64,000 nt of DNA from Vitrella brassicaformis CCMP3155 (Eukaryota > Protista > Chromerida), in assembly GCA_001179505.1 (NCBI GenBank), contig CDMY01000347.1:411259-475258 (forward strand). The letters run 5' to 3'. Positions 6,564 to 64,000 of this stretch are shown piece by piece. Below the pieces are notes generated by a model. The model did no database searches and was not told where the DNA came from. It saw only the letters and a program-made list of their open reading frames with translations. Made by a program: the position numbers and the translations under genes. Position 1 is the first letter of the stretch; each line of letters opens with the position of its first letter.

Positions 6564-7902
6564 CTACGGCGCCATGAGCCCTTCCACGGCTTTCTGCAGG
6601 GCTTCAATCGGGCCCGGCGCTGCGTTGCTGCCACTGCTGCCCTGCTCCAGGCGAGAAATGCGCTCCAGTATGGCGTCATTGGCCTTCATCAGCTCTCCAA
6701 TCGTCTCGTTCATGGCCTCATTGGCCGCCATCAGGTCCGCCTTGGCCCTCTTCAGGTCCTCAATCGTCTCGCTCTGGTCTTCATTGGCCTTGATGATGTC
6801 TTGTGTGACGCCCATTTGCGTGTAGAGCAGCTGTGTAAGGTCGATGGTCATCTCCTCAGCCGGAGCCTCGGCAGCGGCGGCATCTGTCGCCCCTTCGCCA
6901 TTCCCTCCCTCCTCCTGCTCGTCATCATCAGCTTGACGCACGTGTGGCACGAACGTCTTCACAGCCGACGGGAAGATGTGCTGCACCTCAGCAGCGGCCA
7001 GGCCGAGCCGAGCGTCGCCGTCGGCGCGCACACGCAGCTGTCTGAAGGCCTCATAAGCCGCCGATCGGTCGCTGTCGCTCCATTCAGCCATGGAGGTCGG
7101 AAGCTGCTCGCTGTCGGCGCTGTGGATCTCGAACGCGCCTGCAACCGCCCGGCTGGTGATGACTCGAGATCCGCATTCGCACCTGTGAGCGTCCAGTGTT
7201 GGGGCGCGGAGTTCGTCTCGTGCAGTGACATCGTCAGCAGCTTGGACATCGTCATCGGACTGCACGTCCCTTTTTGCTACGACATCACCTTCGTTCACAA
7301 CATACTCTTGGGGGTCGCCCGCCTGCACGCCTGAAAGATAAGCCATCTCAGGGAGCTCCAAAGAACACGTCTGGTCTGTGTAATGGAGCTTACGGCCGCC
7401 AATGACCCTTTCAAAGGCACGCACCACTGGTCCAGCGACTTCCGCACGGGCAATCACGTTCCCTTCCGACATGACGTGGGCACCTTTCGCCTCAATATTG
7501 AAACCGGCCACAATATTTCTCTCAGCAACGACATCGCCATGGTCCGCTGCTTGGTCAGGATCGCCCGCGATAAGGCCTGACCAAGCAGCGTGGAATAAGA
7601 GCTTCGTTCATTTGTCCGTTGAATTCGATCAGCTTACTGTCGAATGCCTTAACGTCGCCGATTGCCTCAACGTCGCCGAATGCCTTAATGTCGCGACCCC
7701 CAACGATGTCACCAGCCGCCCACATGCCGGCCTTCGCCGTCACCATCCGGTCGGCGATGACATTCCCTTCAGCCACAATATCACCGTCGCCCACGAACGT
7801 ATCGGGATTGCCCGCAACGATCTCTGCCAGCACAACCACCACAAGCAAGTAGGTGCATCCAGCGGTGCGTCTGTCTTTCGTCCATTCCTCCGTTTGGCTC
7901 AC
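6564..7902 (-). CDS. Tail-fibre-like repeat protein with peptidase S74/ICA-like chaperone domain and C-terminal coiled coil
   Basis: ORFs 7555-7902 and 6564-7511 join in frame through a candidate 61-nt intron 7637-7577 (GTAAGC...TCAG). Hexapeptide repeats GDIVAE/GNVIAD/GDVEAI/GDVKAF/DDVQAA, then LGLAAAEVQHIFPSAVK...MTIDLTQLLYTQMGVTQDI, then heptads. True start unresolved. Confidence 0.75.
7545..7590. repeat. Perfect 15-bp inverted repeat with 16-nt loop inside the fibre-like gene
   Basis: CGCTGCTTGGTCAGG (7545-7559) is the reverse complement of CCTGACCAAGCAGCG (7576-7590). Confidence 0.95.
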
Positions 7903-8057
7903 TCTTGCAACCGCCGTCGTCCTGACGAATGCAAGCAGTCACACGTTTAGCCCACCCACATGGGTTCAGGCGTGCTCGTCCGGTGTGTTCACGTGTGTGC
8001 CGTTCCTCCGTCATCACTCACCTCTGGCTTCTCCGGGTCACACACACTTTGTCCACG

Positions 8058-15454: not shown

Positions 15455-17840
15455 TCACGCAACGCAGTGGCACAGCGAGGGCAGGATCTGCTCGTGCAGC
15501 GTCCGCCAGCCCACCTGCCTCACACGCCACTGCCGTCCCCTCCTCCTGGCCCTTCTTCGTGGAAACCCTCTTCTCCGCCTCACGCCTATCCCCCTCCGTG
15601 CTGTGGCCATTCTCACAGGGGGACGATATAGCCCGTTTCTCACGTCAGTCCGCCACATGCACTGCACGTGAGCGGCCGTCACGTGATGCACCTGAAGAGT
15701 GGAAAGAAAGAGGCATGATGCATGTTCGTGTGTGTCTGTAGTCTCCTGTGCGATAGATAAAGCATACCATCCACGTGTTGTTTTGTATCGGTGCCCACGG
15801 ACTGCCGCATTTAGGCTCGAACGCCATGCGCGTCCGATCCCTGTCGTCCAGCTGCAGGAAGGAACAAAGGACAGAGAGAACAGCAGATAGCAGCGTGCCG
15901 ATCGTCCTTGAATGTGTGGGCGAGGACCTGACCTGCAGGCCCGTTTTGTTGTGCTTGAAAACGAGAGTCCACAGCCACAGCCCAATCGTGATGTCGTCGT
16001 ACTGCAGCAGCGGGTAGGAGCTATCACTGCTGCCCGCCTCCACCAGCAGGCCGACAATGTCTCGTGAGAGGGCAAAGCACGGCCCCAGGGCGAAAGGCGG
16101 ATAAACATCACGCGGCTCGGGAAAGGCCTGTGTATGTGGCAGGGCAGAGTGGGAAAAGCGTGTGACCAGCAGTCTATCTGCTTTGCTCACGTCTAGAGTG
16201 ATGTTGTTTTCGGAGCTGGGCTTGCGCACGACATGCGAGCCGTACTCGATGAACCTGACACACACACACACAGAAATGGAGACGAGACGACTATTTGTCG
16301 CTGTCTCGCTTGGTGTCTTACCCCCATAAGTACTCGGCCCTCGGCGAATGCTGTAGCCGCTCGAGCAGATACAGCGGGCGAAGATACACATCGTCGTCAA
16401 CTATGGTGAGGTACGACCAATGCCCGCTTCCGACCTTGCCCCTGGTGCCACGATTGACCTCTCGAAAGACCACCATCTGCCCGTTGTGTGGGCTCTCAGC
16501 CTCGCTGATCGACTTGACGTAATCGGCGGACCCCATATGGACGTATCTAAGGATCTCGATGGTCTTCCTTGTCACGTGCCACTCATAGCCATCGTTCGCC
16601 CACACCATAACGATATCGCGGTGCTGCCGCTGCTCCTCCAAAAGCATGCTGGCCTCATCCGTTGTCGCATTGGCGGATGATGTGTCGTTGGTCAGGCCGA
16701 CGAAGAAGATCAACCGAGAGTTTTTGAGAGAAGCCTTGCCCACGATGCCACGGAACAGCCGACCCCATGACATCCGAATAGCATCTCGACGCCCTCTGTG
16801 TCCCACCGCCGACTTCACTGCGAATATCGCCAGGTGCCGATCAGCCCCCATCGCCCTCTCTTCACACAAGGCCGTGGCGTGTCTCATGAGCCGCTCGTGG
16901 TGCGACAGACGGTAGCGGTAGCGCATCAGCAGCGACACCATGTGAGCGGCATTCCTCCTCGCCCACACGTGGTGGGGGCTAAGCTGAGAGCCCAGGTATA
17001 CGATGGCCCTGTCAGGCCTGAAGTTTTCGATGGGCATCACGGCAAACGGTAGGAAGAAGCTGATTTGTTTGAGGGATAGGAAGTCGTGGTTGCCGTCGAC
17101 CAGAGGAATGCCTCCATACATGATGCATGTGATGAAAGCTGGGAGGAGGGCGTGGGAGCGGGAATCGCCTCTGCCGGGCAGCAAGAAGCTGAACACTGCC
17201 TTGGAAAGAAACAAAAACAGACACAGAATACACATAAGACAGAGAAAGACTCTCTGTTTCAACCCTTACCGTATCTCTGGCAGGCTTCTCTGAGGCTATC
17301 CGAGCGTGCTAGTGAGCTGCCAGCCTCCGCCACATACACGGCACCAGGCATGACCACAATGGATGCCTCTACAATCTGATGTGCATCGAGACCTTCCCGT
17401 ACTGCAATGGTCGCTCGCGCCGATGCTGGTGCTGAGGCCTTCACTGGCACCAACAACGACAGAACCTGGGTCCTGTTGCCATCAAATATGACGCCGCTCC
17501 TGCTGGTGTCGAACGCATCCAGCATCTTGAACAGACCTGGCTTCGTGTGGGTGAGAGAGGTCGGGACGAATGGCTTCTCGAGATAGTACAGCCGCTTTGC
17601 CCCGTCGAAGGCCATGAACGGCACCAGGGCGGGGCGCTCCGTCAGGACTGCATCGAATTGAAGATGCTGGGCCATCGCATCTCCAAAGCGGTCCACGAGA
17701 ATGCGGCATGATGTGGGTGAAGCCGACGGATGGCTGACATTGCCGAGAGGACGAAGTGAGCCGTCCGGTGTGATCAATGAGAGGTCGATTGATGGCGCAG
17801 CGGCTGCAGCCGCGAGGAAACAAGCGATAAATCGATGCAT
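15455..17840 (-). CDS. GT31-family (beta-1,3-galactosyltransferase-like) glycosyltransferase with N-terminal signal peptide and long N-terminal extension
   Basis: AVKSAVGHRGRRDAIRMSWG, FFVG, EQRQHRDIV, TIVDDDVYL (DxD), YPPFALGPCFALSRD, YDDITIGLW, HHVT. An upstream exon begins MHRFIACFLAAAAAAP (ATG 17840) with a donor GTAAGG near 17270. Confidence 0.85.
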
Positions 17841-18157
17841 GGGAGGGTGTCTACAGANNNNNNNNNNNNNNNNNNNNNNNNNNNNNNNNNNNNNNNNNNN
17901 NNNNNNNNNNNNNNNNNNNNNNNNNNNNNNNNNNNNNNNNNNNNNNNNNNNNNNNNNNNNNNNNNNNNNNNNNNNNNNNNNNNNNNNNNNNNNNNNNNNN
18001 NNNNNNNNNNNNNNNNNNNNNNNNNNNNNNNNNNNNNNNNNNNNNNNNNNNNNNNNNNNNNNNNNNNNNNNNNNNNNNNNNNNNNNNNNNNNNNNNNNNN
18101 NNNNNNNNNNNNNNNNNNNNNNNNNNNNNNNNNNNNNNNNNNNNNNNNNNNNNNNNN

Positions 18158-20050
18158 CTCCCAGCCACCCACTCACCGCCGTCAATGAGGTCCTTGTCGA
18201 TGTTGAGGTAATCATAGATCTTGCCAATGATGTCGATGTCGGTTTGGTTCTTGACATCAAGGTCGATCAAATCCTTCACCAGGTCATAGATCTTGCCGAT
18301 GATGTCGATGTCGGTGTAGTCCTTGACATCAAGGTCGATCGAACCCTTCACCAGGTCATAGATCTTGCCGATGATGTCGATGTCGGTGTAGTCCTTGACA
18401 TCAAGGTCGATCAAATCCTTCACCAGGTCATACACCTGCACAGACACCAGACGCCACACAGCACACGAATCATGGGGGAGGGGTGTCGAGGGGAGGATTC
18501 GGTGGCTGACAGACCTTGTCAGGGATGTTCCCGGTGATGTTCTTGGCGATGTCAAGGTAGTCATAGAGCTTCTCCGCCAGGTCTGCACACACATACACGC
18601 ACACACACACGCAGGCAAGGAACAAGGAAGGAACCATTAGAGCACACACATGTGTCTCCGTTTCTGTCTGTGTCTCTATCTCTATCTCTCTGTGTCTCCC
18701 AGCCACCCACTCACCGCCGTCAATGAGGTCCTTGTCGATGTTGAGGTAATCATAGATCTTGCCAACGATGTCGATGTCGGTGTAGTTCTTGACATCAAGG
18801 TCGATCAAATCTTTCACCAGGTCATACACCTGCACAGACACCAGACGCCACACAGCACACGAATCATCGGGGAGGGGTGTCGAGGGGAGGATTCGGTGGC
18901 TGACAGACCTTGTCAGTGATGTCCCCAGGGATGTTCTTGGCGATGTCAAGGTAGTCATAGAGCTTCTCCGCCAGGTCTGCACACACATACACACACACAC
19001 ACACACACGCAGGCAAGGAACAAGGAACCATTAGAGCACACACATGTCTCCGTTTCTGTCTGTGTCTCTATCTCTATCTCTCTGTCTCCCAGCCACCCAC
19101 TCACCGCCGTCAATGAGGTCCTTGTCGATGTTGAGGTAATCATAGATCTTGCCAATGATGTCGATGTCGGTTTGGTTCTTGACATCAAGGTCGATCAAAT
19201 CCTTCACCAGGTCATAGATCTTGCCGATGATGTCGATGTCGGTGTAGTTCTTGACATCAAGGTCGATCGAACCCTTCACCAGGTCATAGATCTTGCCGAT
19301 GATGTCGATGTCGATGTCGGTGTGGTCCTTGACATCAAGGTCGATCAAATCCTTCACCAGGTCATAGATCTTGCCGATGATATCGATGTCGGTGTAGTCC
19401 TTGACATCAAGGTCGATCAAATCCTTCACCAGGTCATACACCTGCACAGACACCAGACGCCACACAGCACACGAATCATGGGGGAGGGGTGTCGAGGGGA
19501 GGATTCGGTGGCTGACAGACCTTGTCAGTGATGTTCCCAGGGATGTTCTTGGCGATGTCAAGGTAGTCGTCGGGCTGCACACGAGCACATGACAAAGAAT
19601 CATGGGGAAGGTGTGTGGAGGGGAGGATTCGGTGCCTGATAGACCTTGTCAGGGATGTCCCCAGGGATGTTCTTGGCGATGTCAAGGTAGTCATAGAGCT
19701 TCTCCGCCAGGTCTGCACACACACACACACACACGCAGGCAAGGAACAAGGAAGGAACCGTTAGAGCACACACATGTGTCTCCGTTTCTGTCTGTGTCTC
19801 TATCTCTATCCCTATCTCTCTCTGTCTCCCAGCCACCCACTCACCGCCGTCAATGAGGTCCTTGTCGATGTTGAGGTAATCATAGATCTTGCCTGTCTCC
19901 CAGCCACCCACTCACCGCCGTCAATGAGGTCCTTGTCGATGTTGAGGTAATCATAGATCTTGCCAATGATGTCGATGTCGGTGTAGTTCTTGACATCAAG
20001 GTCGATCAAATCTTTCACCAGGTCATACACCTGCACAGACACCAGACGCC
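18158..20050 (-). repeat. Tandem array of exon+intron units containing 72-bp (24-aa) coding sub-repeats
   Basis: The string ACCAGGTCATAGATCTTGCC recurs at 18278 and 18350 (72-bp period). Whole exon-intron blocks recur at about 18160, 18700, 19090 and 19830-19900. Confidence 0.95.
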
Positions 20051-20992
20051 ACACAGCACACGCGTGTGGGTGTACCCCCCACACTCACGACTCACTCACC
20101 CCATCAAGGTCGGGCGAGGTGGTTTCCGCAAGCACCTTCAAATCCTCATAGATATCCTGTGGCCGCCGAGACACACACAGAAGGCACAATTGACTGAGAT
20201 GACAGGCTCAGCCCTCACCCACCCACCTCGATCTTGTCGATGATCTCAATGTCGTAGATTTTGTCGAGGCCGTCGTCGACGATGCCCGCGACACCGTCAA
20301 CCACCTTGTCGCCGACATCCGTGGCTATGTCATCGACCCCTGATAGGATGGCACACAACGCAGCAGGTCAGGATGGATGTGAGGCGCGCCCATCAGTCAG
20401 TCTGTCTGTCCCCTGTCACGCGTCTGTTTCCCTGACTGACTCACCGTCGACCACGTCCTTGACGTCGTCATAGATCGAGTCGAGAACGTCAACATCTGCC
20501 CAGCACAGACGCGCACAACCACCATGAGTCTTCCATGACCATCAACCAGCTCATCCTGTTGGCTCACCGGTGGTGTTTTTGTCAAGGTCGATGATGTCGT
20601 CCAGGTAGTCGTACACCTTGTCAACCGTGTCAGTGACATCGTCATGCACCTGCTCTCACACACCGTACACGACACACGAACGACACAAAGGTGTATGCAA
20701 CCGCGCATACTGTGAGTGGGAGGAAGCCAAGGCCCAGCTGACCACCCCCCCGGTGCAGGTGAGTGCGCAGGTGGGAGGGGCGGCCGGCCGGTCACGCACG
20801 CACACACGCCTGCCACGCCCCTCCCCTCACCTTGTCGGGGTCGATAATGTCCCTGATGATGCCCAGAATGCCGTCGATCATAATCTCTGTCTCGTGCCCC
20901 TGCAGGCGGCGCTTCTCGCTGCTGCTCAAGAATGCGTCATTGGCGTGGCAGACCACGCACAGCGCGGCCAGCAGAGAGAGCGCCCTGATCAT
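18158..20992 (-). CDS. Secreted Asp/Ile/Leu/Val/Lys-rich repeat protein, 5-prime part (3-prime end lost in gap)
   Basis: Signal peptide MIRALSLLAALCVVCHA, then EKRRLQG, then many short exons and repeated exons VYDLVKDLIDLDVKDYTDIDIIGKI and DLAEKLYDYLDIAKNIPGNITDK with GT-AG introns. Confidence 0.85.
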
Positions 20993-21279
20993 TCTGTCTG
21001 CTGACGGACGGGGCGCGGAGGGAGGAAGGGGCAGGCTGGAAGAGGGAGGGTCGACGGTCAATGGGGCTTCCTTGTGGCGCCAGGCACTCACCGCCGCTCT
21101 CTTAAAAAGGGAACATACAGGGACACTACGCAGCGCGCGTCTTTGATGGTTTTTGAGTGAGACGAGCAGCCTGTACGGGGAAACCCTAGGTCAACATGCA
21201 GCCGTTCAAGTTGTAAATTGACTCGCTTTTGACTTTGGGAAGAAGGGGCAGCGACACCGCTCACACGAGGCCACGATCG

Positions 21280-23086
21280 ATGATGCGGCGAGGCGTCGCG
21301 TTGCTCCTCGTCGCAGCGGCGGGGCTGACGCTCGCCACAGACGATTTCATGAACAAGCAGAAGCAGCCACAGCAGCAACAGCAGGCTGGAGAGGGGCAGC
21401 AGGTGGATCAGAGGCGTCTGCAGGAGATCAACGCCAGCCGGGCAGTAGAGGAGAGGAAAAACCGAACGGCCATGTACAAGTAAGCAGCTCGGCTCACCAG
21501 GCAGACACCGGAACTTAACTCGCTGTCATTGTGGCGTTGATGCTTATGCAGGTTCATGCAGAATACGATGCCCCTTGAGGATAGGAAGAAGACACTCGGC
21601 CTTATTATGACGTGAGATCGATGCACGAGGGAGGGAGGGAGGGAGGGAGGGTCTTCACTCACTCACTCGCTCGCCTCCCTCGGCGTGTGCGTGCATTGCT
21701 TGTTGTGTGGGTGCGGTGCAGTGACTCGGCGCTGCGGACGCCTCAAGAGAAGGTGACCGACCTGCTGGATCCTATAAATCTGGCTCCGACCGATGTCAAG
21801 TTCCTTGAGGACTTCTATGCCCTCATCGACGGCACGTACAAGGACGACGAGCTCATCTTCGGTCCGCCACACGCCGCACGCCACACACAAACCGGCACCT
21901 GCACACACGAGGACAAGCCATCACGCGCGTGTGTGTGTCTGCGACTGCTTGCAGGTCTGTTGCCAAAAGGATTCTTCAAGGGTTTGCCCGGGTTTGTTTT
22001 GGGCCTTCCTGCTGCCTTAGTTGACGCGATACCCGTGCTCGAGGCCATCGAAAATCCCCCATACCCCGGCTTCATCACCATCTCGACAGAAGAGCAGTGC
22101 CTGACTGAGAAGGAGGGCACCACGGAGCTTGTGGGGTACGACCTGAAGCTCAACGAGTGCTTCCTCAAGTGTCAGCTCCGGTCTGGCTGCACGGGCATCA
22201 CATACGAGCAGACAGACGAGGACGGTCAGTGTGCACACACGAGTGAGAGACGTGTCTGTCCAGTGAGTGAGTGTATGTGGATGTGGCGCTCTCGTCGCTT
22301 GGCCTGTGTGTCTGCAGGGGTGGCGATTGAGCAGTGTTATGTCCACACCAGCAAGGTCACCGGATCTGATCCCGTGACGTGCTTCGAGAGGATTTTCTTT
22401 GACGGCGACACAGAGACGGGCTTCAACGAGACGTTCGTTGAGACCGGCCAGGGCAAGTGCCGGCTGTCAGACGGAACAGACTCATCGGCACCCAAGCCAC
22501 CCAAATTCAGTCAGTATTCCACCGCCCGACACCAACACAGCCTGTGCACACTTCGGTGTGGGTCTTTTCTGTGTGCTGGCTGGTTTGAATGAACAGTTGA
22601 AGAGTCGGTCGAGGTTGAGGACATTATTGCGTGTGCGGAGCTCTGTGTGGAGGCGGGCGAGAACTGCCAGGGCATTGAGTTCCTCGGCGAGGTCGAACTC
22701 GATGAGGACGAAAATGCCAGCAGTGGCGCCGGCAGATGCAGTAAGTGCACTCACTGCACACCACGGGGTGTGCAGGCCAGGCCAGTCAGAGAAATCAAGC
22801 AAGGAAGGAACAAGCCGACAGACAGATGGACGCTAGCTACTAATGCTGGAATCTTCTGTGTCTGTCTGTCTGGCTGTCTGTCTGTGTATCTCTGCCTAAG
22901 TCCTTCAAAGCCACGGGCCGCCCAGCCGCTTTGCCGTCCCGCAATGCTACGTCAACGTAAGAAAGAGAAACACCGGCAGCCCAGCCCGTGTGTGTCACTC
23001 ACTTCCGTCCGTTGGTTGTGTCTGCCTGGTTGCAGCTGCCCACGGGCCTATTCGGCCTCGGCAAGCTGGGCCTCGATTATGTCTGA
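21280..23086 (+). CDS. Secreted protein with two PAN/Apple-like domains
   Basis: Signal peptide MMRRGVALLLVAAAGLTLA, then QRRLQE. Cys patterns ECFLKCQLRSGCTGITY...QCYVH...TCF and GKCRLSDG...ACAELCVEAGENCQGIEF...GRC. Last exon LPTGLFGLGKLGLDYV stop at 23086. Confidence 0.8.
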
Positions 23087-23828
23087 GCCATCCCAGCAGC
23101 TCAACAACGCCCTCTACAATGCTTCCTGTGTATTACCATGCTCTTTGCCTCCCCCACCGTCCCCTCTCTGCCGACTCTCTTGGCTGTCCCTCCCTCCCTC
23201 CCTCACTCCCTCCCCCTCTCTCTCTCTCTCTCTCTCTGAGCACCTGATTGAGTCTTGTCAGTGTCAGTCAGTACTTAAAGCTAGTGTGCGACGGTGCGTG
23301 CGTCTATGTGTGCGTGGATGAGCCAGGTCCCTTTCGCGAGTAAGGCCCCTGATTGCTGTGGCAAAGTTCGGCAGCCACCAGGGGCCGGTACGTTCGCGGG
23401 CACCTGGTAAGGTGACGAGTCAGTGACAAGTGAGTGCATGAGTAGTGAGTGGCACGTAGGCTTCGCTGTCATGTGGTGTGGTGCATGTACGTGCGTGTGC
23501 CTGTGAGTAATGGATGGATGGATGGATGGATGTGACAGACATTGGATGATAGCATTCTTAATGTGTCGCGCGTCCAGCCCATCAGCCATCCTGCATGTCA
23601 GTCAAACAATAAATCAATCAATCATGGGTCATTGTCATTCATTCATTCAGTGATTCACTGCAGACAACTCCCTCGGTTGCTTCGCTTGGGAGACGGCCGT
23701 AATCCTGGCCTGACTGGCCACGAGGTGGCCGGCCATGGGTGTCTCACATCACCCATTCATGGTCAATATAGCCGGCCACCCTATATAGAAACACCCACCC
23801 ACCCACCTCCCCCGTCGGGTCTTCCGGC

Positions 23829-23922
23829 GGAAGAGCCGACGGGAGAGGTGTACGTATACATGTATTTGTACGAATGTGTACCCTGTAAAGGGTATACGTA
23901 CACCTCTCCCGTCGGCTCTTCC
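23829..23922. repeat. Perfect 31-bp inverted repeat (32-nt spacer) running into a gap
   Basis: 23829-23859 GGAAGAGCCGACGGGAGAGGTGTACGTATAC is the exact reverse complement of 23892-23922. Confidence 0.97.
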
Positions 23923-24222
23923 NNNNNNNNNNNNNNNNNNNNNNNNNNNNNNNNNNNNNNNNNNNNNNNNNNNNNNNNNNNNNNNNNNNNNNNNNNNNNN
24001 NNNNNNNNNNNNNNNNNNNNNNNNNNNNNNNNNNNNNNNNNNNNNNNNNNNNNNNNNNNNNNNNNNNNNNNNNNNNNNNNNNNNNNNNNNNNNNNNNNNN
24101 NNNNNNNNNNNNNNNNNNNNNNNNNNNNNNNNNNNNNNNNNNNNNNNNNNNNNNNNNNNNNNNNNNNNNNNNNNNNNNNNNNNNNNNNNNNNNNNNNNNN
24201 NNNNNNNNNNNNNNNNNNNNNN

Positions 24223-24705
24223 ACTGAGGTCCCAGACCTGCACGCGGCCCTCCTGGTCGCCCAGCAGCACCTCTGCTTGGTTGGCATGCAGCGCCGCCCC
24301 GTGGACAGGCACCGGCGCGCTGGCCGTGGTGGCCATGGTGGCCGTGGAGGTGCTCTCGTTGTCGAGCGAGAGCTGGTAGCCGGTGCCGCGGCAGTCCCAG
24401 ATCTTGACGCTGCTGTCCTCGCTGGACGAGAAGAACCAGCGGCCGGTCTTCTCGAACCCGACGCTCGTAACGTTGCTGGTGTGTCCGTCCATGGTGCTGA
24501 CGGCCGTGTTGCTGGCGGAGGAAAGGTCGAAGAGCTTCATGAGGGGGTTGCCGGCGCAGAGCACCTGGGTCTTGTCCGGGGTGACCTCCAGGCAGTTGAT
24601 GTGTGAGTCATTGTAGGGGATGGTGCGGAAACACTGACCCAGGTGGGCATTCCAGTAGCGAAGGGTGTGGTCGTACCCGCCGGTTATCAGCAGAGGCAGA
24701 TCCAT
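24223..24705 (-). CDS. LST8: Diverged LST8 paralog, 5-prime part only (rest in gap or truncated)
   Basis: Same WD40 sequence with substitutions (LSSAS vs LASAS, TTASAP vs TTAGAP). About 130 bp of recognisably homologous but diverged upstream sequence. Confidence 0.85.
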
Positions 24706-60520: not shown

Positions 60521-61489
60521 ACAACACAGACAGGCAATGCATGCAGGTCAGGTGTGTATTAGAACATTGTGACAGACAATGCGTCAGTCAGTCAGCAGCC
60601 CAGCCAGCCAGCCAGCCTACATGCAGCAAAGCTTGCCTGTAAGTCTCTCGTCGATCGATCGAAGCAAAACGGGCGGCAAATACATTCATCCACACCGACC
60701 CATGCCATGCACTCGTCAGTCCACGTCGATCTGTCTGTCTGTCTCTGTCTCTGTATGTCGCTCCACTCACTGAGTCTCTGTACATCGATCTACACAACAG
60801 ACATTGATGGCATGCATACATTAAAGCGTGTGGATGTGAGTGATGTGCGTCCTCATAAATATAAGTATGTAAGGCCCGCCACACACACTACACACAGGAA
60901 GACGCTTATCTCCCCCTTTGTCCTTTGAAAGGGGGGGAACATCGCGAGATTCCTGCTCAACACTTATACACACAAGTGAGCAAGACACTACAGGCAGGCA
61001 GATCGATACATACAGACGAGAGAGAGACGAGAGACAAACAGACAGACAGAAAGCTGTCGTAGCATGTGTGCATAGCATGATGAATGACATCGGATAAAAT
61101 GAAAACTCTAGCGATAGATAGATAGATAGGTATGTTTTGTAATGGCGATATGTACATGTAGCAGCGTACTTACTGATCGTATGCAGGCGGGCAAGAGAAA
61201 GCAACGAGCGCCCGTACATCGACAGAAATGACCGCCTGCCTTTAGCCTTCTTTACGCAGGGGACGGAGAGAGCGAGAGGAAGAGGAAGAGGGAGAGGGAG
61301 GGGTAGAGACACAGAGACAAAGCAAGCATGACCTAGCTACCCCAGAGACACGACACACCCCACACAGACAAGACAGACACATGCCCGCTCCTCAAGTCAC
61401 TTCACACGCCTCATGAGCGGGAGAAGAGCTGCACACACACCACACACACACACACCACAGGACAGGACAGCAACCATTACACCTAGGTC

Positions 61490-64000
61490 TCCCTCCCTCT
61501 ATCTATCTGGGCGTGTCAGCTGACTGACCTTGACGCTGCAGCTCTGTGTGGATGAGGTGGCCGGCTTGTTGTCCTCATCGAAGAGCTTGCAGTTATTCTC
61601 ACCCTTCTTGGCGAACTCGAAGCCGTTGCAGCTCCCAGATGACACGCAGGCGTGCTGGCACGCACCCTGCTCAGCCACGGTCAGCTCTGCACAGCCATCC
61701 ACACGCATACACACACATGACGCATTGCTTTCTCCCTCCCTCCTTCGCTCGCTCACCCTCCTCAGCTTCTGGGATGGAGCCGTCCTTGCGTCTGCATGCG
61801 CCGACGCCGACCTCCTTGAGCTCCTTGTCTGCGGTCGCATCCTCATCCTCCGCATCCTCGAGGCTGAAGCACCTGACGCTTGTGGTGCCCTTGATGGCCT
61901 TGGAGATCAGCTTGCACTGCGCCTCGGCCTTGCCGTCCTCGTCAGTGTAGCCGAAATTAACAGCCTGGCACGAGAGGTCAAGTGAGCATCTGCACACACA
62001 GACGGGGGATGGGTGGCACAAGTGGATGGATGGATGGATGGGCTTCTTGCTTACGCGAAGAGGCACTCGTATTCGGTGATCTCTCCCTCGCCGAAGAAGG
62101 ACTCCTTCTCCTTTGCCGCATCGTCGTCAACCAGGCAGGCCTGGGTCTCGCTCTCCTGCTTGAAGCCAGGGAAGTTCAGGATGATGTCGTCAAAGCCTGC
62201 ACACACATACACACATTAGAGCACCACGGCACTGATCAAACGGACTCAGCTTTCCCCTTCCTTCCTGGCCTCTGGTGTTCTGACCGAAGCGGAGCCTGTC
62301 GAGAGCTGTGAAGTCCGGGACGATCTTGGAGAGGATGTCCACGTCGGCCTCCAGGAGGCGCCGTCCTTCGTCCTCGCTGAACAGCTTGTCAAGGTCGCCG
62401 AGGTCCAAAAGGAGACCCTTCTCGTAGAGCCTGGTGAGGAGGCCCTTGAGGTAGTCAAGGTCGAGGGAGAGGAGGTCGATGTCCTTGAGAATGTCGAGGT
62501 CGATGTCGTAGAGGCCCTTCAGGGGGTCTGTCAGGTCCAGTCCGGGCAGCAGGCCCTTCTCGTACAGGTCGGGGATGATCTCCTTGATGATGTCCAGACT
62601 CCGGATGACATCTGCAGACAGACAAAGGGAGACACGGAGTGGCAGGGGGAGAGAGTGGTGAGGATGGGTGTGTGTGTGTGTGTGTGCGTGTGTGCGTGTG
62701 GCGCCAAACGTACCGACGTCCTTGATGATTCCAAGGTCGATGAGCGAGATGATGTCGCCGAGGTCCTCGATGGCCTTGTCGTAGTCGACGAGGTCGCGGA
62801 TCTTGTCCAGGTCGGTCAGGTTGTACAGGTAAAACTTGTACTCATCTTACACATATACAAACGCACAGACATGAGACGCAGATCCCTGTCTGTCTGGCTT
62901 CGCGTGTTGACGCACCGATGTCGACTTTATCGAAGAGGTCCTCAAGGCTGTCGCGGACCTTGTCGAAGTCGTAGTCGGGGAGGAGCGAGATGTCCTTGAG
63001 CTTGTCGGCGACGACCTCAACGCCGTTACCGATCTTGACCACCTTGTCGATCGAGCCACCGATTTTCTCAATGATGTCTGACACGCACACAGAGACGGAA
63101 ACAGTGGTGTGCTGCTGTCTCAGGTCGGCTGCTGTGCTGTGATCACCCTTAAAGATGCCAGTGACGCCCAGTTCAACGCCTGCACAGATGTCAAAAGAGA
63201 CGGGCAGAAAGGCGTGCTCACGTGAGTGTGATAGGACGGATGGGACGCACCAGTGATGATGTTCTTGACGCCACTGTAGAACTTGTCGCCGATCTTGATG
63301 GCGTCCCCGACCTTATCGGTCACGTCCGCAACCGGACCTCCGATGAGGATCTCGTCAAGGACCTTTGTGATCGCCACAACGACGCCGTCGATCACGTCCT
63401 TGGAGGCGTCATCCACTTCTGCACGCACACAAATGTGGGGTGGGAGGGGTCAAGTCAGCTACACGCGTGTGTGAGGGCGTGTCGGGTCTTACGGTCAACA
63501 ACGTCCTTGACATCGTCGTAGATATCTATGGTATCGACACCTGATGGATGGATGGATGGCACACAGCAGATAGACAGGCAGAAAGGCAGACAGGCCACGT
63601 CTGTGCACCACACTGAATGCTCCCCTCTGTCACTCACCGTCGATCACGTCCTTGACGTCGTCGTAGATCGTGTCGAGAACGTCCAGGTCAAGGTCATAGT
63701 CCTTATCGTCGCCAGTACCGTCACCATTGCCATCGTCGGGCTGTACACGAGCACATGACACACGAATCATGGAGGAGGGGTGTCGAGGGGAGGATTCGGT
63801 GGCTGACAGACCTTGTCAGTGATGCTCCCGGTGATGTTCTTGGCGATGTCAAGGTAGTCATAGATCTTCTCCGCCAGGTCAAGGTAGTCATAGATCTTCT
63901 CCGCCAGGTCTGCACACACATACACCAATGATTTTTTTTTTGCAGGCAAGGAACAAGGAACCATTAGAGCACACACATGTGTCTCCGTTTCTGTCTGTGT
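61490..64000 (-). CDS. Secreted Asp/Ile-rich repeat protein, 3-prime part, with two C-terminal PAN/Apple-like domains (continues beyond the window)
   Basis: 63720-64000 matches the repeat exons and introns at 18.5-19.7 kb. Then DIIEKIGGSIDK..., DEGRRLLEAD, LNFPGFKQESETQACL...CQAVNFGYTDEDGKAEAQCKL...RCF, GACRRKDGS...ACQHACVSSGSCNGFEF...NCKLF. Confidence 0.85.

What the first reader, a model, noticed from the sequence alone, without database searches (positions are those of the whole stretch)
20897..21426. Family of secreted PAN/Apple proteins with PEXEL/TEXEL-like RRLx(E/G) motifs in a probably free-living alveolate
Seen: signal peptide then RRLQG (20911-20897, minus); signal peptide then RRLQE (21412-21426, plus); and an internal RRLLE (62363-62349) upstream of the PAN pair in the 61-64 kb gene. 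The 21 kb and 61 kb genes are clear paralogs: GFITISTEEQCL vs GFKQESETQACL; CTGITYEQTDEDG vs CQAVNFGYTDEDG; GQGKCRLSDG vs GVGACRRKDG. Known: RxLx(E/Q/D) is the Plasmodium PEXEL cleaved by plasmepsin V, RRL is the Toxoplasma TEXEL cleaved by ASP5, and PAN/Apple domains are typical of microneme adhesins. Inference: a pre-parasitic secretory maturation system in which an aspartyl protease processes adhesin-like or wall proteins, with the internal RRLLE releasing the PAN module from the acidic repeat stalk. RRL is also a generic dibasic-like propeptide motif in many protists, so a kexin/subtilisin-type enzyme is an alternative.
Basis: partly seen in the sequence, partly recalled or inferred. Interest (0 to 1): 0.8.

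Follow-up and report, generated by a model that had tools for sequence, protein, structure and literature searches.

The report
Secreted algal PAN proteins with RRL motif
In the free-living alga Vitrella brassicaformis, a close relative of malaria parasites, three linked and expressed genes for acidic secreted proteins each carry one Arg-Arg-Leu motif that looks like the cutting signal parasites use to mature exported proteins, but cutting itself is untested.

Summary
The window is Vitrella brassicaformis CCMP3155 (a chromerid). RRLQG (20911-20897, minus), RRLQE (21412-21426, plus) and RRLLE (62363-62349, minus) all lie in coding frames.

The first two follow plausible signal peptides of two divergently transcribed genes. 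Spliced transcript contigs from three runs confirm both genes.

The plus-strand gene (P0001, 370 aa) and the 61 kb gene (P0002) are each other's only relatives among 1.84 billion proteins. Both pass the Pfam PAN_1 threshold, with 12 conserved Cys.

Corrections:
- The minus-strand gene shows no PAN module in the assembled sequence.
- The 61 kb gene combines that gene's acidic repeat stalk with the PAN pair.
- The RRL positions are not homologous between the paralogs.

All three proteins are Arg-poor, so RRL is unexpected in each (expected counts 0.056, 0.042, 0.01; pooled P about 2e-4, uncorrected for selection).

My reading is a secretory-pathway processing site (about 0.5). Within that, I lean to an ASP5/plasmepsin-V-type cut after Leu over a kexin-type cut after RR. 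No cleavage data, orthologues or genome-wide enrichment test were available, and an ASP5 orthologue could not be searched.

The scan has noted RRL motifs at least 15 times elsewhere in this genome. I did not check those notes.

The parts
20831..20992 (-). Gene A exon 1. It encodes the signal peptide (aa 1-17, 20992-20942), a 13-aa spacer NDAFLSSSEKRRL, and then the start of the acidic Asp/hydrophobic repeats.
   Evidence: Translation. The exon and its donor site are confirmed by spliced contigs in runs X1, X2 and X8, and the 5' UTR reaches at least 21166.
20897..20911 (-). RRLQG motif of gene A (aa 28-32), preceded by EK.
   Evidence: Codons are CGC CGC CTG CAG GGG.
18158..20646 (-). Gene A downstream exons and the tandem exon-intron array. 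They encode Arg-free Asp/hydrophobic repeats. The 3' end is lost in the N gap at 17858-17857+300.
   Evidence: Exons 2-5 come from spliced contigs, the array ORFs, and the N run 17858-18157.
21167..21233 (.). Shared divergent promoter. At most about 70 bp lie between the outermost transcript ends of gene A and gene B.
   Evidence: The gene A contig reaches 21166. The gene B transcript contig L002 starts at window 21234.
21280..23086 (+). Gene B = P0001. It has 8 exons and encodes 370 aa: signal peptide, a Gln-rich spacer, RRLQE, a helical acidic region, and two PAN/Apple modules.
   Evidence: Searches give the protein and the exon map. Searches give intact cDNA contigs. Six of the seven introns are seen as joints (the 21612-21721 intron lies in a skipped repeat); the seventh is confirmed by the cDNA contig L002.
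21412..21426 (+). RRLQE motif of gene B (aa 45-49), 25 residues after the predicted signal-peptide cut.
   Evidence: Codons are AGG CGT CTG CAG GAG.
22098..22947 (+). PAN/Apple pair of gene B, from Cys182 to Cys351 (12 Cys), across exons 4-7.
   Evidence: PAN_1 scores 24.3 bits against a cutoff of 21.4. Atlas features point to PAN clusters at 0.93.
61411..64000 (-). The 61 kb gene (P0002 as annotated from 63770). It continues upstream to the contig end and consists of an A-type acidic stalk followed by a B-type PAN pair.
   Evidence: The stretch 63632-64000 is 76-96% identical in DNA to gene A's array units and exon 3.
62349..62363 (-). Internal RRLLE of the 61 kb gene (P0002 aa 309-313), about 45 residues before the first PAN cysteine.
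61538..62134 (-). PAN/Apple pair of the 61 kb gene.
   Evidence: PAN_1 scores 33.2 bits in two stretches, and 21.8 bits on the last exon alone.

Best explanation
Three linked, expressed, lineage-restricted genes of Vitrella brassicaformis encode very acidic, Arg-poor secreted proteins. Gene A is signal peptide plus an Asp/hydrophobic repeat stalk. Gene B is signal peptide plus a short acidic region plus two PAN/Apple modules. The 61 kb gene is an A-type stalk plus a B-type PAN pair. They are most likely extracellular matrix, wall or adhesion proteins in which the PAN pair is the binding end.

The single RRL in each is most likely an endoproteolytic maturation site used in the ER or Golgi. In A and B it would remove a short N-terminal propeptide of 13 and 28 residues. 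In the 61 kb protein it would separate the stalk from the PAN module.

Within this reading I lean to an ASP5/plasmepsin-V-type aspartyl protease cutting after Leu (about 0.3 overall) over a kexin-type subtilase cutting after RR (about 0.2).

Shown here: the motifs, reading frames, expression, splicing, PAN identity, paralogy and Arg-poverty. Inferred: secretion, cleavage, the enzyme and the function.
For: - Motifs lie in verified coding frames.
- RRL is unexpected from composition: expected counts are 0.056 (P0001), 0.042 (P0002) and 0.0097 (five RNA-confirmed exons of gene A). The pooled P of three or more is 1.9e-4, before any correction for selection.
- Exons 2-5 of gene A contain no Arg at all.
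- In A and B the motif sits between the signal peptide with a low-complexity spacer and the start of the acidic or helical body. This is the usual place for a propeptide boundary.
- The two N-terminal motifs share RRLQ but use different Arg codons, and the leaders do not align. They are therefore either independent occurrences or a retained tetrapeptide in otherwise fully diverged leaders.
- TEXEL is defined as RRLxx with P1' and P2' dispensable. It can work both near the N-terminus (GRA16, residues 63-67) and internally (MYR1). Plasmepsin V cuts RRLAE about twice as well as a canonical PEXEL (PMC4764566). The organism belongs to the chromerids, the closest free-living photosynthetic relatives of Apicomplexa (PMC4501334).
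Against: - There are no cleavage data of any kind.
- RRL positions are not homologous between the paralogs. P0002 RRLLE aligns with P0001 GLPAALVD, and P0001 RRLQE aligns with P0002 ADKLKDIS.
- P0001 has no relative other than P0002 among 1.84e9 representative proteins, so conservation cannot be tested.
- The motif was picked post hoc by a reader who looks for it. RRLx[EQDG] occurs 17 times in the six-frame translation of this GC-rich window, including an out-of-frame RRLQE at 7916-7902.
- An ASP5/plasmepsin V orthologue in Vitrella was not tested. The one phylogeny paper found names chromerid enzymes in its text only for clade B and, as 'free-living basal Apicomplexa', clade F, not for the ASP5 clade D (PMC8540915).
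- Gene A has Gly at P2', which does not fit PEXEL.
Confidence: 0.5

Rival explanations
1. Chance or a purely structural tripeptide. RRL is not recognised by any protease. The three occurrences are coincidences noticed by a reader primed for PEXEL/TEXEL, or they are ordinary residues of amphipathic helices.
For: - The motif is not at homologous positions in the paralogs.
- The leaders do not align.
- There are no orthologues.
- The motif is frequent in six-frame noise of this GC-rich DNA: 120 RRL in 128,000 residues, including one out-of-frame RRLQE inside another secreted gene.
- The low-confidence model puts RRLQE at the start of a predicted helix.
Against: - Composition-based expectations are low in all three proteins (0.056, 0.042, 0.0097), and the product of the single-protein probabilities is 2e-5.
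- Two head-to-head secreted genes both carry RRLQ within 30-50 residues of the start.
- Arg is otherwise almost absent from gene A.
Confidence: 0.3
2. Kexin/furin-type dibasic processing. A Golgi subtilase cuts after the Arg-Arg pair (EKRR|LQG, DQRR|LQE, EGRR|LLE), as in fungal Kex2 substrates and prohormones. Leu would then be only the P1' residue. This is a sub-case of the processing reading above, with a different enzyme.
For: - All three sites hold an RR pair, and gene A has the classical KRR context.
- Apart from the RR in the signal-peptide n-region and one RRK inside a PAN module, these are the only RR pairs in P0001 and P0002.
An unchecked scan note reports an Arg-directed subtilisin elsewhere in this genome (s1-201642).
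Against: - Leu follows RR in all three sites, which a P2-P1-directed convertase does not require. This carries little weight, because the sites were selected for containing RRL.
- No convertase gene was examined here.
Confidence: 0.2
3. A non-proteolytic sorting or binding signal. RRLQ would be read by a cargo receptor for routing to a particular secretory compartment or wall layer, without cleavage.
For: The only support is the position just after the signal peptide in two co-located genes. Nothing specific points this way.
Against: I know of no precedent for a lumenal RRL sorting signal that is not also a cleavage site. The third motif is internal.
Confidence: 0.08

Closest known systems
Toxoplasma TEXEL (RRLxx) substrates of the Golgi aspartyl protease ASP5, e.g. 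GRA16 (RRLAE, aa 63-67) and MYR1 (internal RRLSE)
   Same: All three sites have the RRL tripeptide, a secretory protein context, both N-terminal and internal positions, and an acidic P2' in two of the three.
   Different: The host is a free-living phototroph with no host cell to export into. The carriers are acidic repeat and PAN proteins, not dense-granule effectors. Cleavage and the presence of the enzyme are untested. In gene A the motif lies only 10 residues after the predicted signal-peptide cut.
Plasmodium PEXEL (RxLxE/Q/D) cleaved by ER plasmepsin V
   Same: RRLQE of gene B, 25 residues after the signal-peptide cut, fits the consensus and the usual spacing. RRLLE fits the consensus. Plasmepsin V cuts RRLAE efficiently.
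   Different: Gene A has Gly at P2'. The 61 kb motif is internal. There is no export machinery context.
Kex2/furin-type dibasic propeptide sites
   Same: All sites have an RR pair in an acidic, disordered context, and gene A has KRR. A short N-terminal propeptide follows the signal peptide.
   Different: A constant Leu follows the RR pair. No Arg is present at P4, as furin would need.
Apicomplexan PAN/Apple adhesins (TgMIC4, EtMIC5, Sarcocystis SML; own knowledge) and Pfam PAN_1 (PF00024)
   Same: There are two tandem six-Cys modules that pass the PAN_1 threshold, and the proteins are secreted.
   Different: The modules are very divergent, with no PDB sequence hit even with a profile. There is no relative outside Vitrella. 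The modules are attached to an Asp/hydrophobic repeat stalk not known from microneme proteins.

Membership tests
PAN/Apple domain (Pfam PF00024 PAN_1) | Profile score at or above the curated gathering threshold (21.4 bits) | tested here: met
   P0001 scores 24.3 bits. P0002 scores 33.2 bits in two stretches. The last PAN exon of the 61 kb gene alone scores 21.8 bits. Gene A has no hit.
PAN/Apple domain (Pfam PF00024 PAN_1) | Conserved cysteine framework (four to six Cys per module) | tested here: met
   Each module has six Cys, and all 12 are invariant between P0001 and P0002.
PAN/Apple domain (Pfam PF00024 PAN_1) | Fold: a helix packed on a curved antiparallel sheet | tested here: inconclusive
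   The AlphaFold2 model has mean pLDDT 31.9, so no fold search was run on it. Atlas language-model features point to PAN clusters at 0.93.
TEXEL (ASP5 substrate) | Entry into the secretory pathway | tested here: met
   Genes A and B have hydrophobic N-termini with small residues at -3 and -1. This is heuristic only, with no SignalP. The N-terminus of the 61 kb gene lies off the contig.
TEXEL (ASP5 substrate) | RRL at P3-P1 | tested here: met
   RRLQG, RRLQE and RRLLE. The definition is from PMC4764566.
TEXEL (ASP5 substrate) | Cleavage after Leu by an ASP5-type protease | not testable with these tools
   This needs N-terminomics or reporter assays.
TEXEL (ASP5 substrate) | An ASP5/plasmepsin V (clade D) orthologue in the genome | not tested
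   No ASP5 or plasmepsin V sequence was available by reference to use as a query. The text of PMC8540915 names chromerid enzymes only in clades B and F. An unchecked scan note (s1-201876) claims such a gene elsewhere in the genome.
PEXEL (plasmepsin V substrate) | RxLxE/Q/D about 15-30 residues after the signal-peptide cut | tested here: inconclusive
   Gene B meets it (RRLQE, 25 residues after the cut). Gene A does not (Gly at P2', 10 residues). The 61 kb motif fits the consensus but is internal.
Kexin-type dibasic site | K/R-R immediately before the scissile bond in an exposed segment | tested here: met
   The sites read KRR, QRR and GRR. Exposure is only inferred from low-complexity flanks. 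The enzyme was not examined.

The most novel reading that the evidence does not exclude
RRL-directed maturation by an ASP5/plasmepsin-V-type protease already operates on ordinary secreted wall or adhesion proteins in a free-living chromerid. Under that reading, the PEXEL/TEXEL signal of parasites is a co-opted general secretory processing site, and these three genes are among its native substrates.
Probability: 0.27. Interest if true: 0.8.

Novelty: new member of a known kind. Interest (0 to 1): 0.45.

Why it matters
How the PEXEL/TEXEL export signal of malaria and Toxoplasma parasites arose is an open question. If a free-living relative cuts RRL in everyday secreted proteins, the parasite signal would be an inherited housekeeping maturation site rather than an invention of parasitism.

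Vitrella would then offer a host-free system for studying the protease. The two genes at 21 kb are small, expressed and fully resolved, so they would be convenient reporters.

Without cleavage data, the present finding is a well-documented candidate and not a demonstration.

Tried and rejected
- Orthologue conservation: P0001 against 1.84e9 representative proteins returned only P0002. P0002 against 5.8e9 proteins returned only itself. No conservation test is possible.
- Full-length transcripts: a search of JGI metagenome contigs for the 61 kb gene, and an exact-DNA search for gene A exon 1, both found nothing. The N-terminus of the 61 kb gene and the 3' end of gene A stay unknown.
- Structure: the AlphaFold2 model of P0001 with a two-sequence alignment was unusable (pLDDT 31.9), so I ran no fold search.
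- PDB sequence and profile searches gave no hit.
- Shared ancestry of the two leader exons: there is no BLASTP alignment, and the only DNA similarity is the 15-nt motif itself.
- A PAN module in gene A: none was found with a profile of the PAN pair over all six frames. The segment after the N gap is unrelated to P0002.
- Plastid-type bipartite leader (Phe shortly after the signal peptide): rejected. The spacers and mature proteins are strongly acidic, and the proteins carry disulfide-rich PAN modules.
- Oomycete RxLR: rejected, because there is no Arg at position 4.
- Literature: no paper in the library links TEXEL, PEXEL or ASP5 to chromerid substrates.
- Only single exons and database proteins were used.
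Full report
**Source and setting.** The window is the last 64 kb of contig CDMY01000347.1 of Vitrella brassicaformis CCMP3155 (GCA_001179505.1). Window position 64000 is the contig end. The DNA is 50-65% G+C, rich in introns, and holds six 300-N assembly gaps.

**The observation.** A six-frame scan places all three motifs as described: RRLQG at 20911-20897 (minus), RRLQE at 21412-21426 (plus) and RRLLE at 62363-62349 (minus). All three lie in real coding frames.

*Gene B.* Gene B (plus strand, ATG 21280, stop 23086, 8 exons) is the database protein P0001, 370 aa. My hand-made splice model matched it residue for residue.
- Two JGI transcript contigs encode it intact.
- Spliced contigs from three public runs in two studies show six of its seven introns as joints. 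The seventh (21612-21721) lies in a repeat the tool skipped, and the cDNA contig L002 confirms it.
- The product starts MMRRGVALLLVAAAGLTLA|TDDF. A Gln-rich spacer follows, then RRLQE at residues 45-49.

*Gene A.* Gene A (minus strand, ATG 20992) starts MIRALSLLAALCVVCHA|NDAFLSSSEKRRLQGHETE.
- The same runs confirm its first five exons and four introns, and its 5' UTR reaches at least 21166.
- The outermost transcript ends of A and B are at most about 70 bp apart, so the two genes share a divergent promoter.

*The 61 kb gene.* RRLLE is residues 309-313 of P0002, the annotated product of the 61 kb gene.

**PAN identity and paralogy.**
- P0001 scores 24.3 bits and P0002 33.2 bits on Pfam PAN_1, against a gathering threshold of 21.4. 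Single exons score lower, as expected for split domains.
- Language-model features of P0001 residues 165-360 point to PAN clusters at 0.93.
- The two proteins align over two six-Cys modules with all 12 Cys invariant. BLASTP on the central exon gives E=2e-10.
- An exhaustive HMMER search of 1.84 billion representative proteins found P0002 as the only relative of P0001. P0002 found only itself among 5.8 billion proteins. This is a two-member family restricted to Vitrella.
- Fold-level confirmation failed. The AlphaFold2 model had pLDDT 31.9, and PDB sequence and profile searches were blank.

1. Gene A is not shown to be a PAN protein.
   - After exon 1 it consists of Asp/hydrophobic repeat exons and a tandem exon-intron array. 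It then runs into an N gap at 17858-18157.
   - A profile of the PAN pair finds no third PAN gene in the window.
   - The public 1126-aa model joins gene A to a galactosyltransferase gene across that gap. That join is doubtful, because the segment after the gap is unrelated to P0002.
2. The 61 kb gene is modular.
   - Its 5' part (63632-64000) is 76-96% identical in DNA to gene A's array units and to gene A's exon 3, and the matches run across exon-intron boundaries.
   - Its 3' part is the B-type PAN pair.
   - Its annotated start (MIRVSCARVQ, 63770) is very likely an artefact. The repeats continue to the contig end, so its true N-terminus is unknown.
3. The RRL positions are not homologous. 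In the alignment, P0002 RRLLE faces P0001 GLPAALVD, and P0001 RRLQE faces P0002 ADKLKDIS.
4. The leader exons of A and B do not align. The only DNA similarity between them is the 15-nt motif, which uses different Arg codons: CGC CGC in A and AGG CGT in B.

**Is the motif more than chance?** Two points argue for caution.
- RRL occurs 120 times in 128,000 six-frame residues of this GC-rich window. RRLx[EQDG] occurs 17 times.
- One of those is an RRLQE at 7916-7902, inside the neighbouring secreted tail-fibre-like gene. My phase check of its first three exons puts this motif out of frame: exon 1 is 93 nt, the 19-nt micro-exon 7921-7903 reads DDGGCK, and exon 3 is then in frame.

Against chance, the three real proteins are Arg-poor.
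- The expected number of RRL from composition is 0.056 for P0001, 0.042 for P0002 and 0.0097 for the 152 RNA-confirmed residues of gene A.
- Exons 2-5 of gene A contain no Arg at all.
- The pooled probability of three or more occurrences is 1.9e-4, and the product of the single-protein probabilities is 2e-5.

I conclude that pure coincidence is the less likely explanation (about 0.3), though it is not excluded.

**Mechanism.** The published definitions hold.
- ASP5 needs Arg at P3, Arg at P2 and Leu at P1, while P1' and P2' are dispensable.
- TEXEL works near the N-terminus (GRA16, residues 63-67) and internally (MYR1).
- Plasmepsin V needs RxLxE/Q/D and cuts RRLAE about twice as well as a canonical PEXEL (PMC4764566; PMC8540915).

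All three Vitrella motifs meet the TEXEL definition. Gene B also meets PEXEL in sequence and spacing. Gene A does not, because it has Gly at P2' and sits only 10 residues after the predicted cut.

The motifs sit at plausible maturation points.
- In A and B they lie between the signal peptide with its spacer and the body of the protein. Cutting would remove propeptides of 13 and 28 residues.
- In P0002 the motif lies about 45 residues before the first PAN cysteine.

A kexin-type cut after RR fits equally well on sequence, and gene A reads EKRR|L. I lean to the aspartyl-protease reading for two reasons: the lineage is the closest free-living relative of the organisms that have RRL-specific enzymes, and Leu is constant. 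The second reason is weak, because the sites were chosen for having RRL.

I could not search for an ASP5/plasmepsin V orthologue, because no query sequence was available by reference. The text of the one relevant phylogeny paper names chromerid enzymes only in clades B and F. No paper in the library links TEXEL or PEXEL to chromerid proteins.

**Earlier scan notes.** The scan has at least 15 notes on RRL motifs in secreted proteins of this same genome, on other contigs. Two have follow-ups that describe invariant RRL-containing cassettes. One of those cassettes is EKRRL, the same pentapeptide as in gene A. A first-reader note also claims a plasmepsin V/ASP5-type gene elsewhere. These are unchecked AI notes and I could not reach their DNA, so I treat them as leads and not as support.

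**Function of the proteins.** These are acidic, secreted, lineage-specific proteins with a repeat stalk and a terminal PAN pair. I infer that they are wall, matrix or adhesion components, with the PAN pair as the ligand-binding end. Nothing here tests that.

**Verdict.** The family claim needs correcting. The TEXEL/PEXEL interpretation is a reasonable but untested hypothesis: about 0.5 that RRL is a processing site, and about 0.27 that the enzyme is of the ASP5/plasmepsin V type.

Noticed in passing
window 15455-20992 (-), N gap 17858-18157: The public 1126-aa gene model joins the acidic-repeat gene A to a Galactosyl_T gene (PF01762, 38.7 bits on ORF 16321-17262) across a 300-N gap. A Met at 17840 followed by FIACFLAAAAAAP could be the transferase's own signal anchor, so the fusion is probably an annotation artefact.
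   Followed up: partly
window 63632-64000 (-) versus 18462-19797 and 20439-20490: The 5' part of the 61 kb gene is 76-96% identical in DNA to units of gene A's tandem exon-intron array and to its exon 3, and the matches run across exon-intron boundaries. This points to recent duplication or gene conversion between two loci 43 kb apart. The annotated start of P0002 at 63770 is probably not the real one.
   Followed up: partly
window 21167-21233: Genes A and B are transcribed head to head from transcript ends at most about 70 bp apart, which indicates a compact bidirectional promoter.
   Followed up: partly
window 7902-7916 (-): There is an RRLQE just downstream of the signal-peptide exon of the tail-fibre-like secreted gene. 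A phase check of exons 1-3 puts it out of frame: the 19-nt micro-exon 7921-7903 reads DDGGCK. This bears on the overlapping scan note s1-218632. I had no reads call left to confirm the micro-exon.
   Followed up: partly
window 22804-22905: Contig depth is hundreds of times that of the flanks in all four runs, over a (CTGT)n-like simple repeat in intron 6 of gene B. The repeat attracts many unrelated contigs, so this is not a feature of the gene.
   Followed up: no
window 23749-24705 (-): A WD40 repeat gene, interrupted by an N gap, lies directly downstream of gene B. It resembles LST8/G-beta-like proteins by eye.
   Followed up: no
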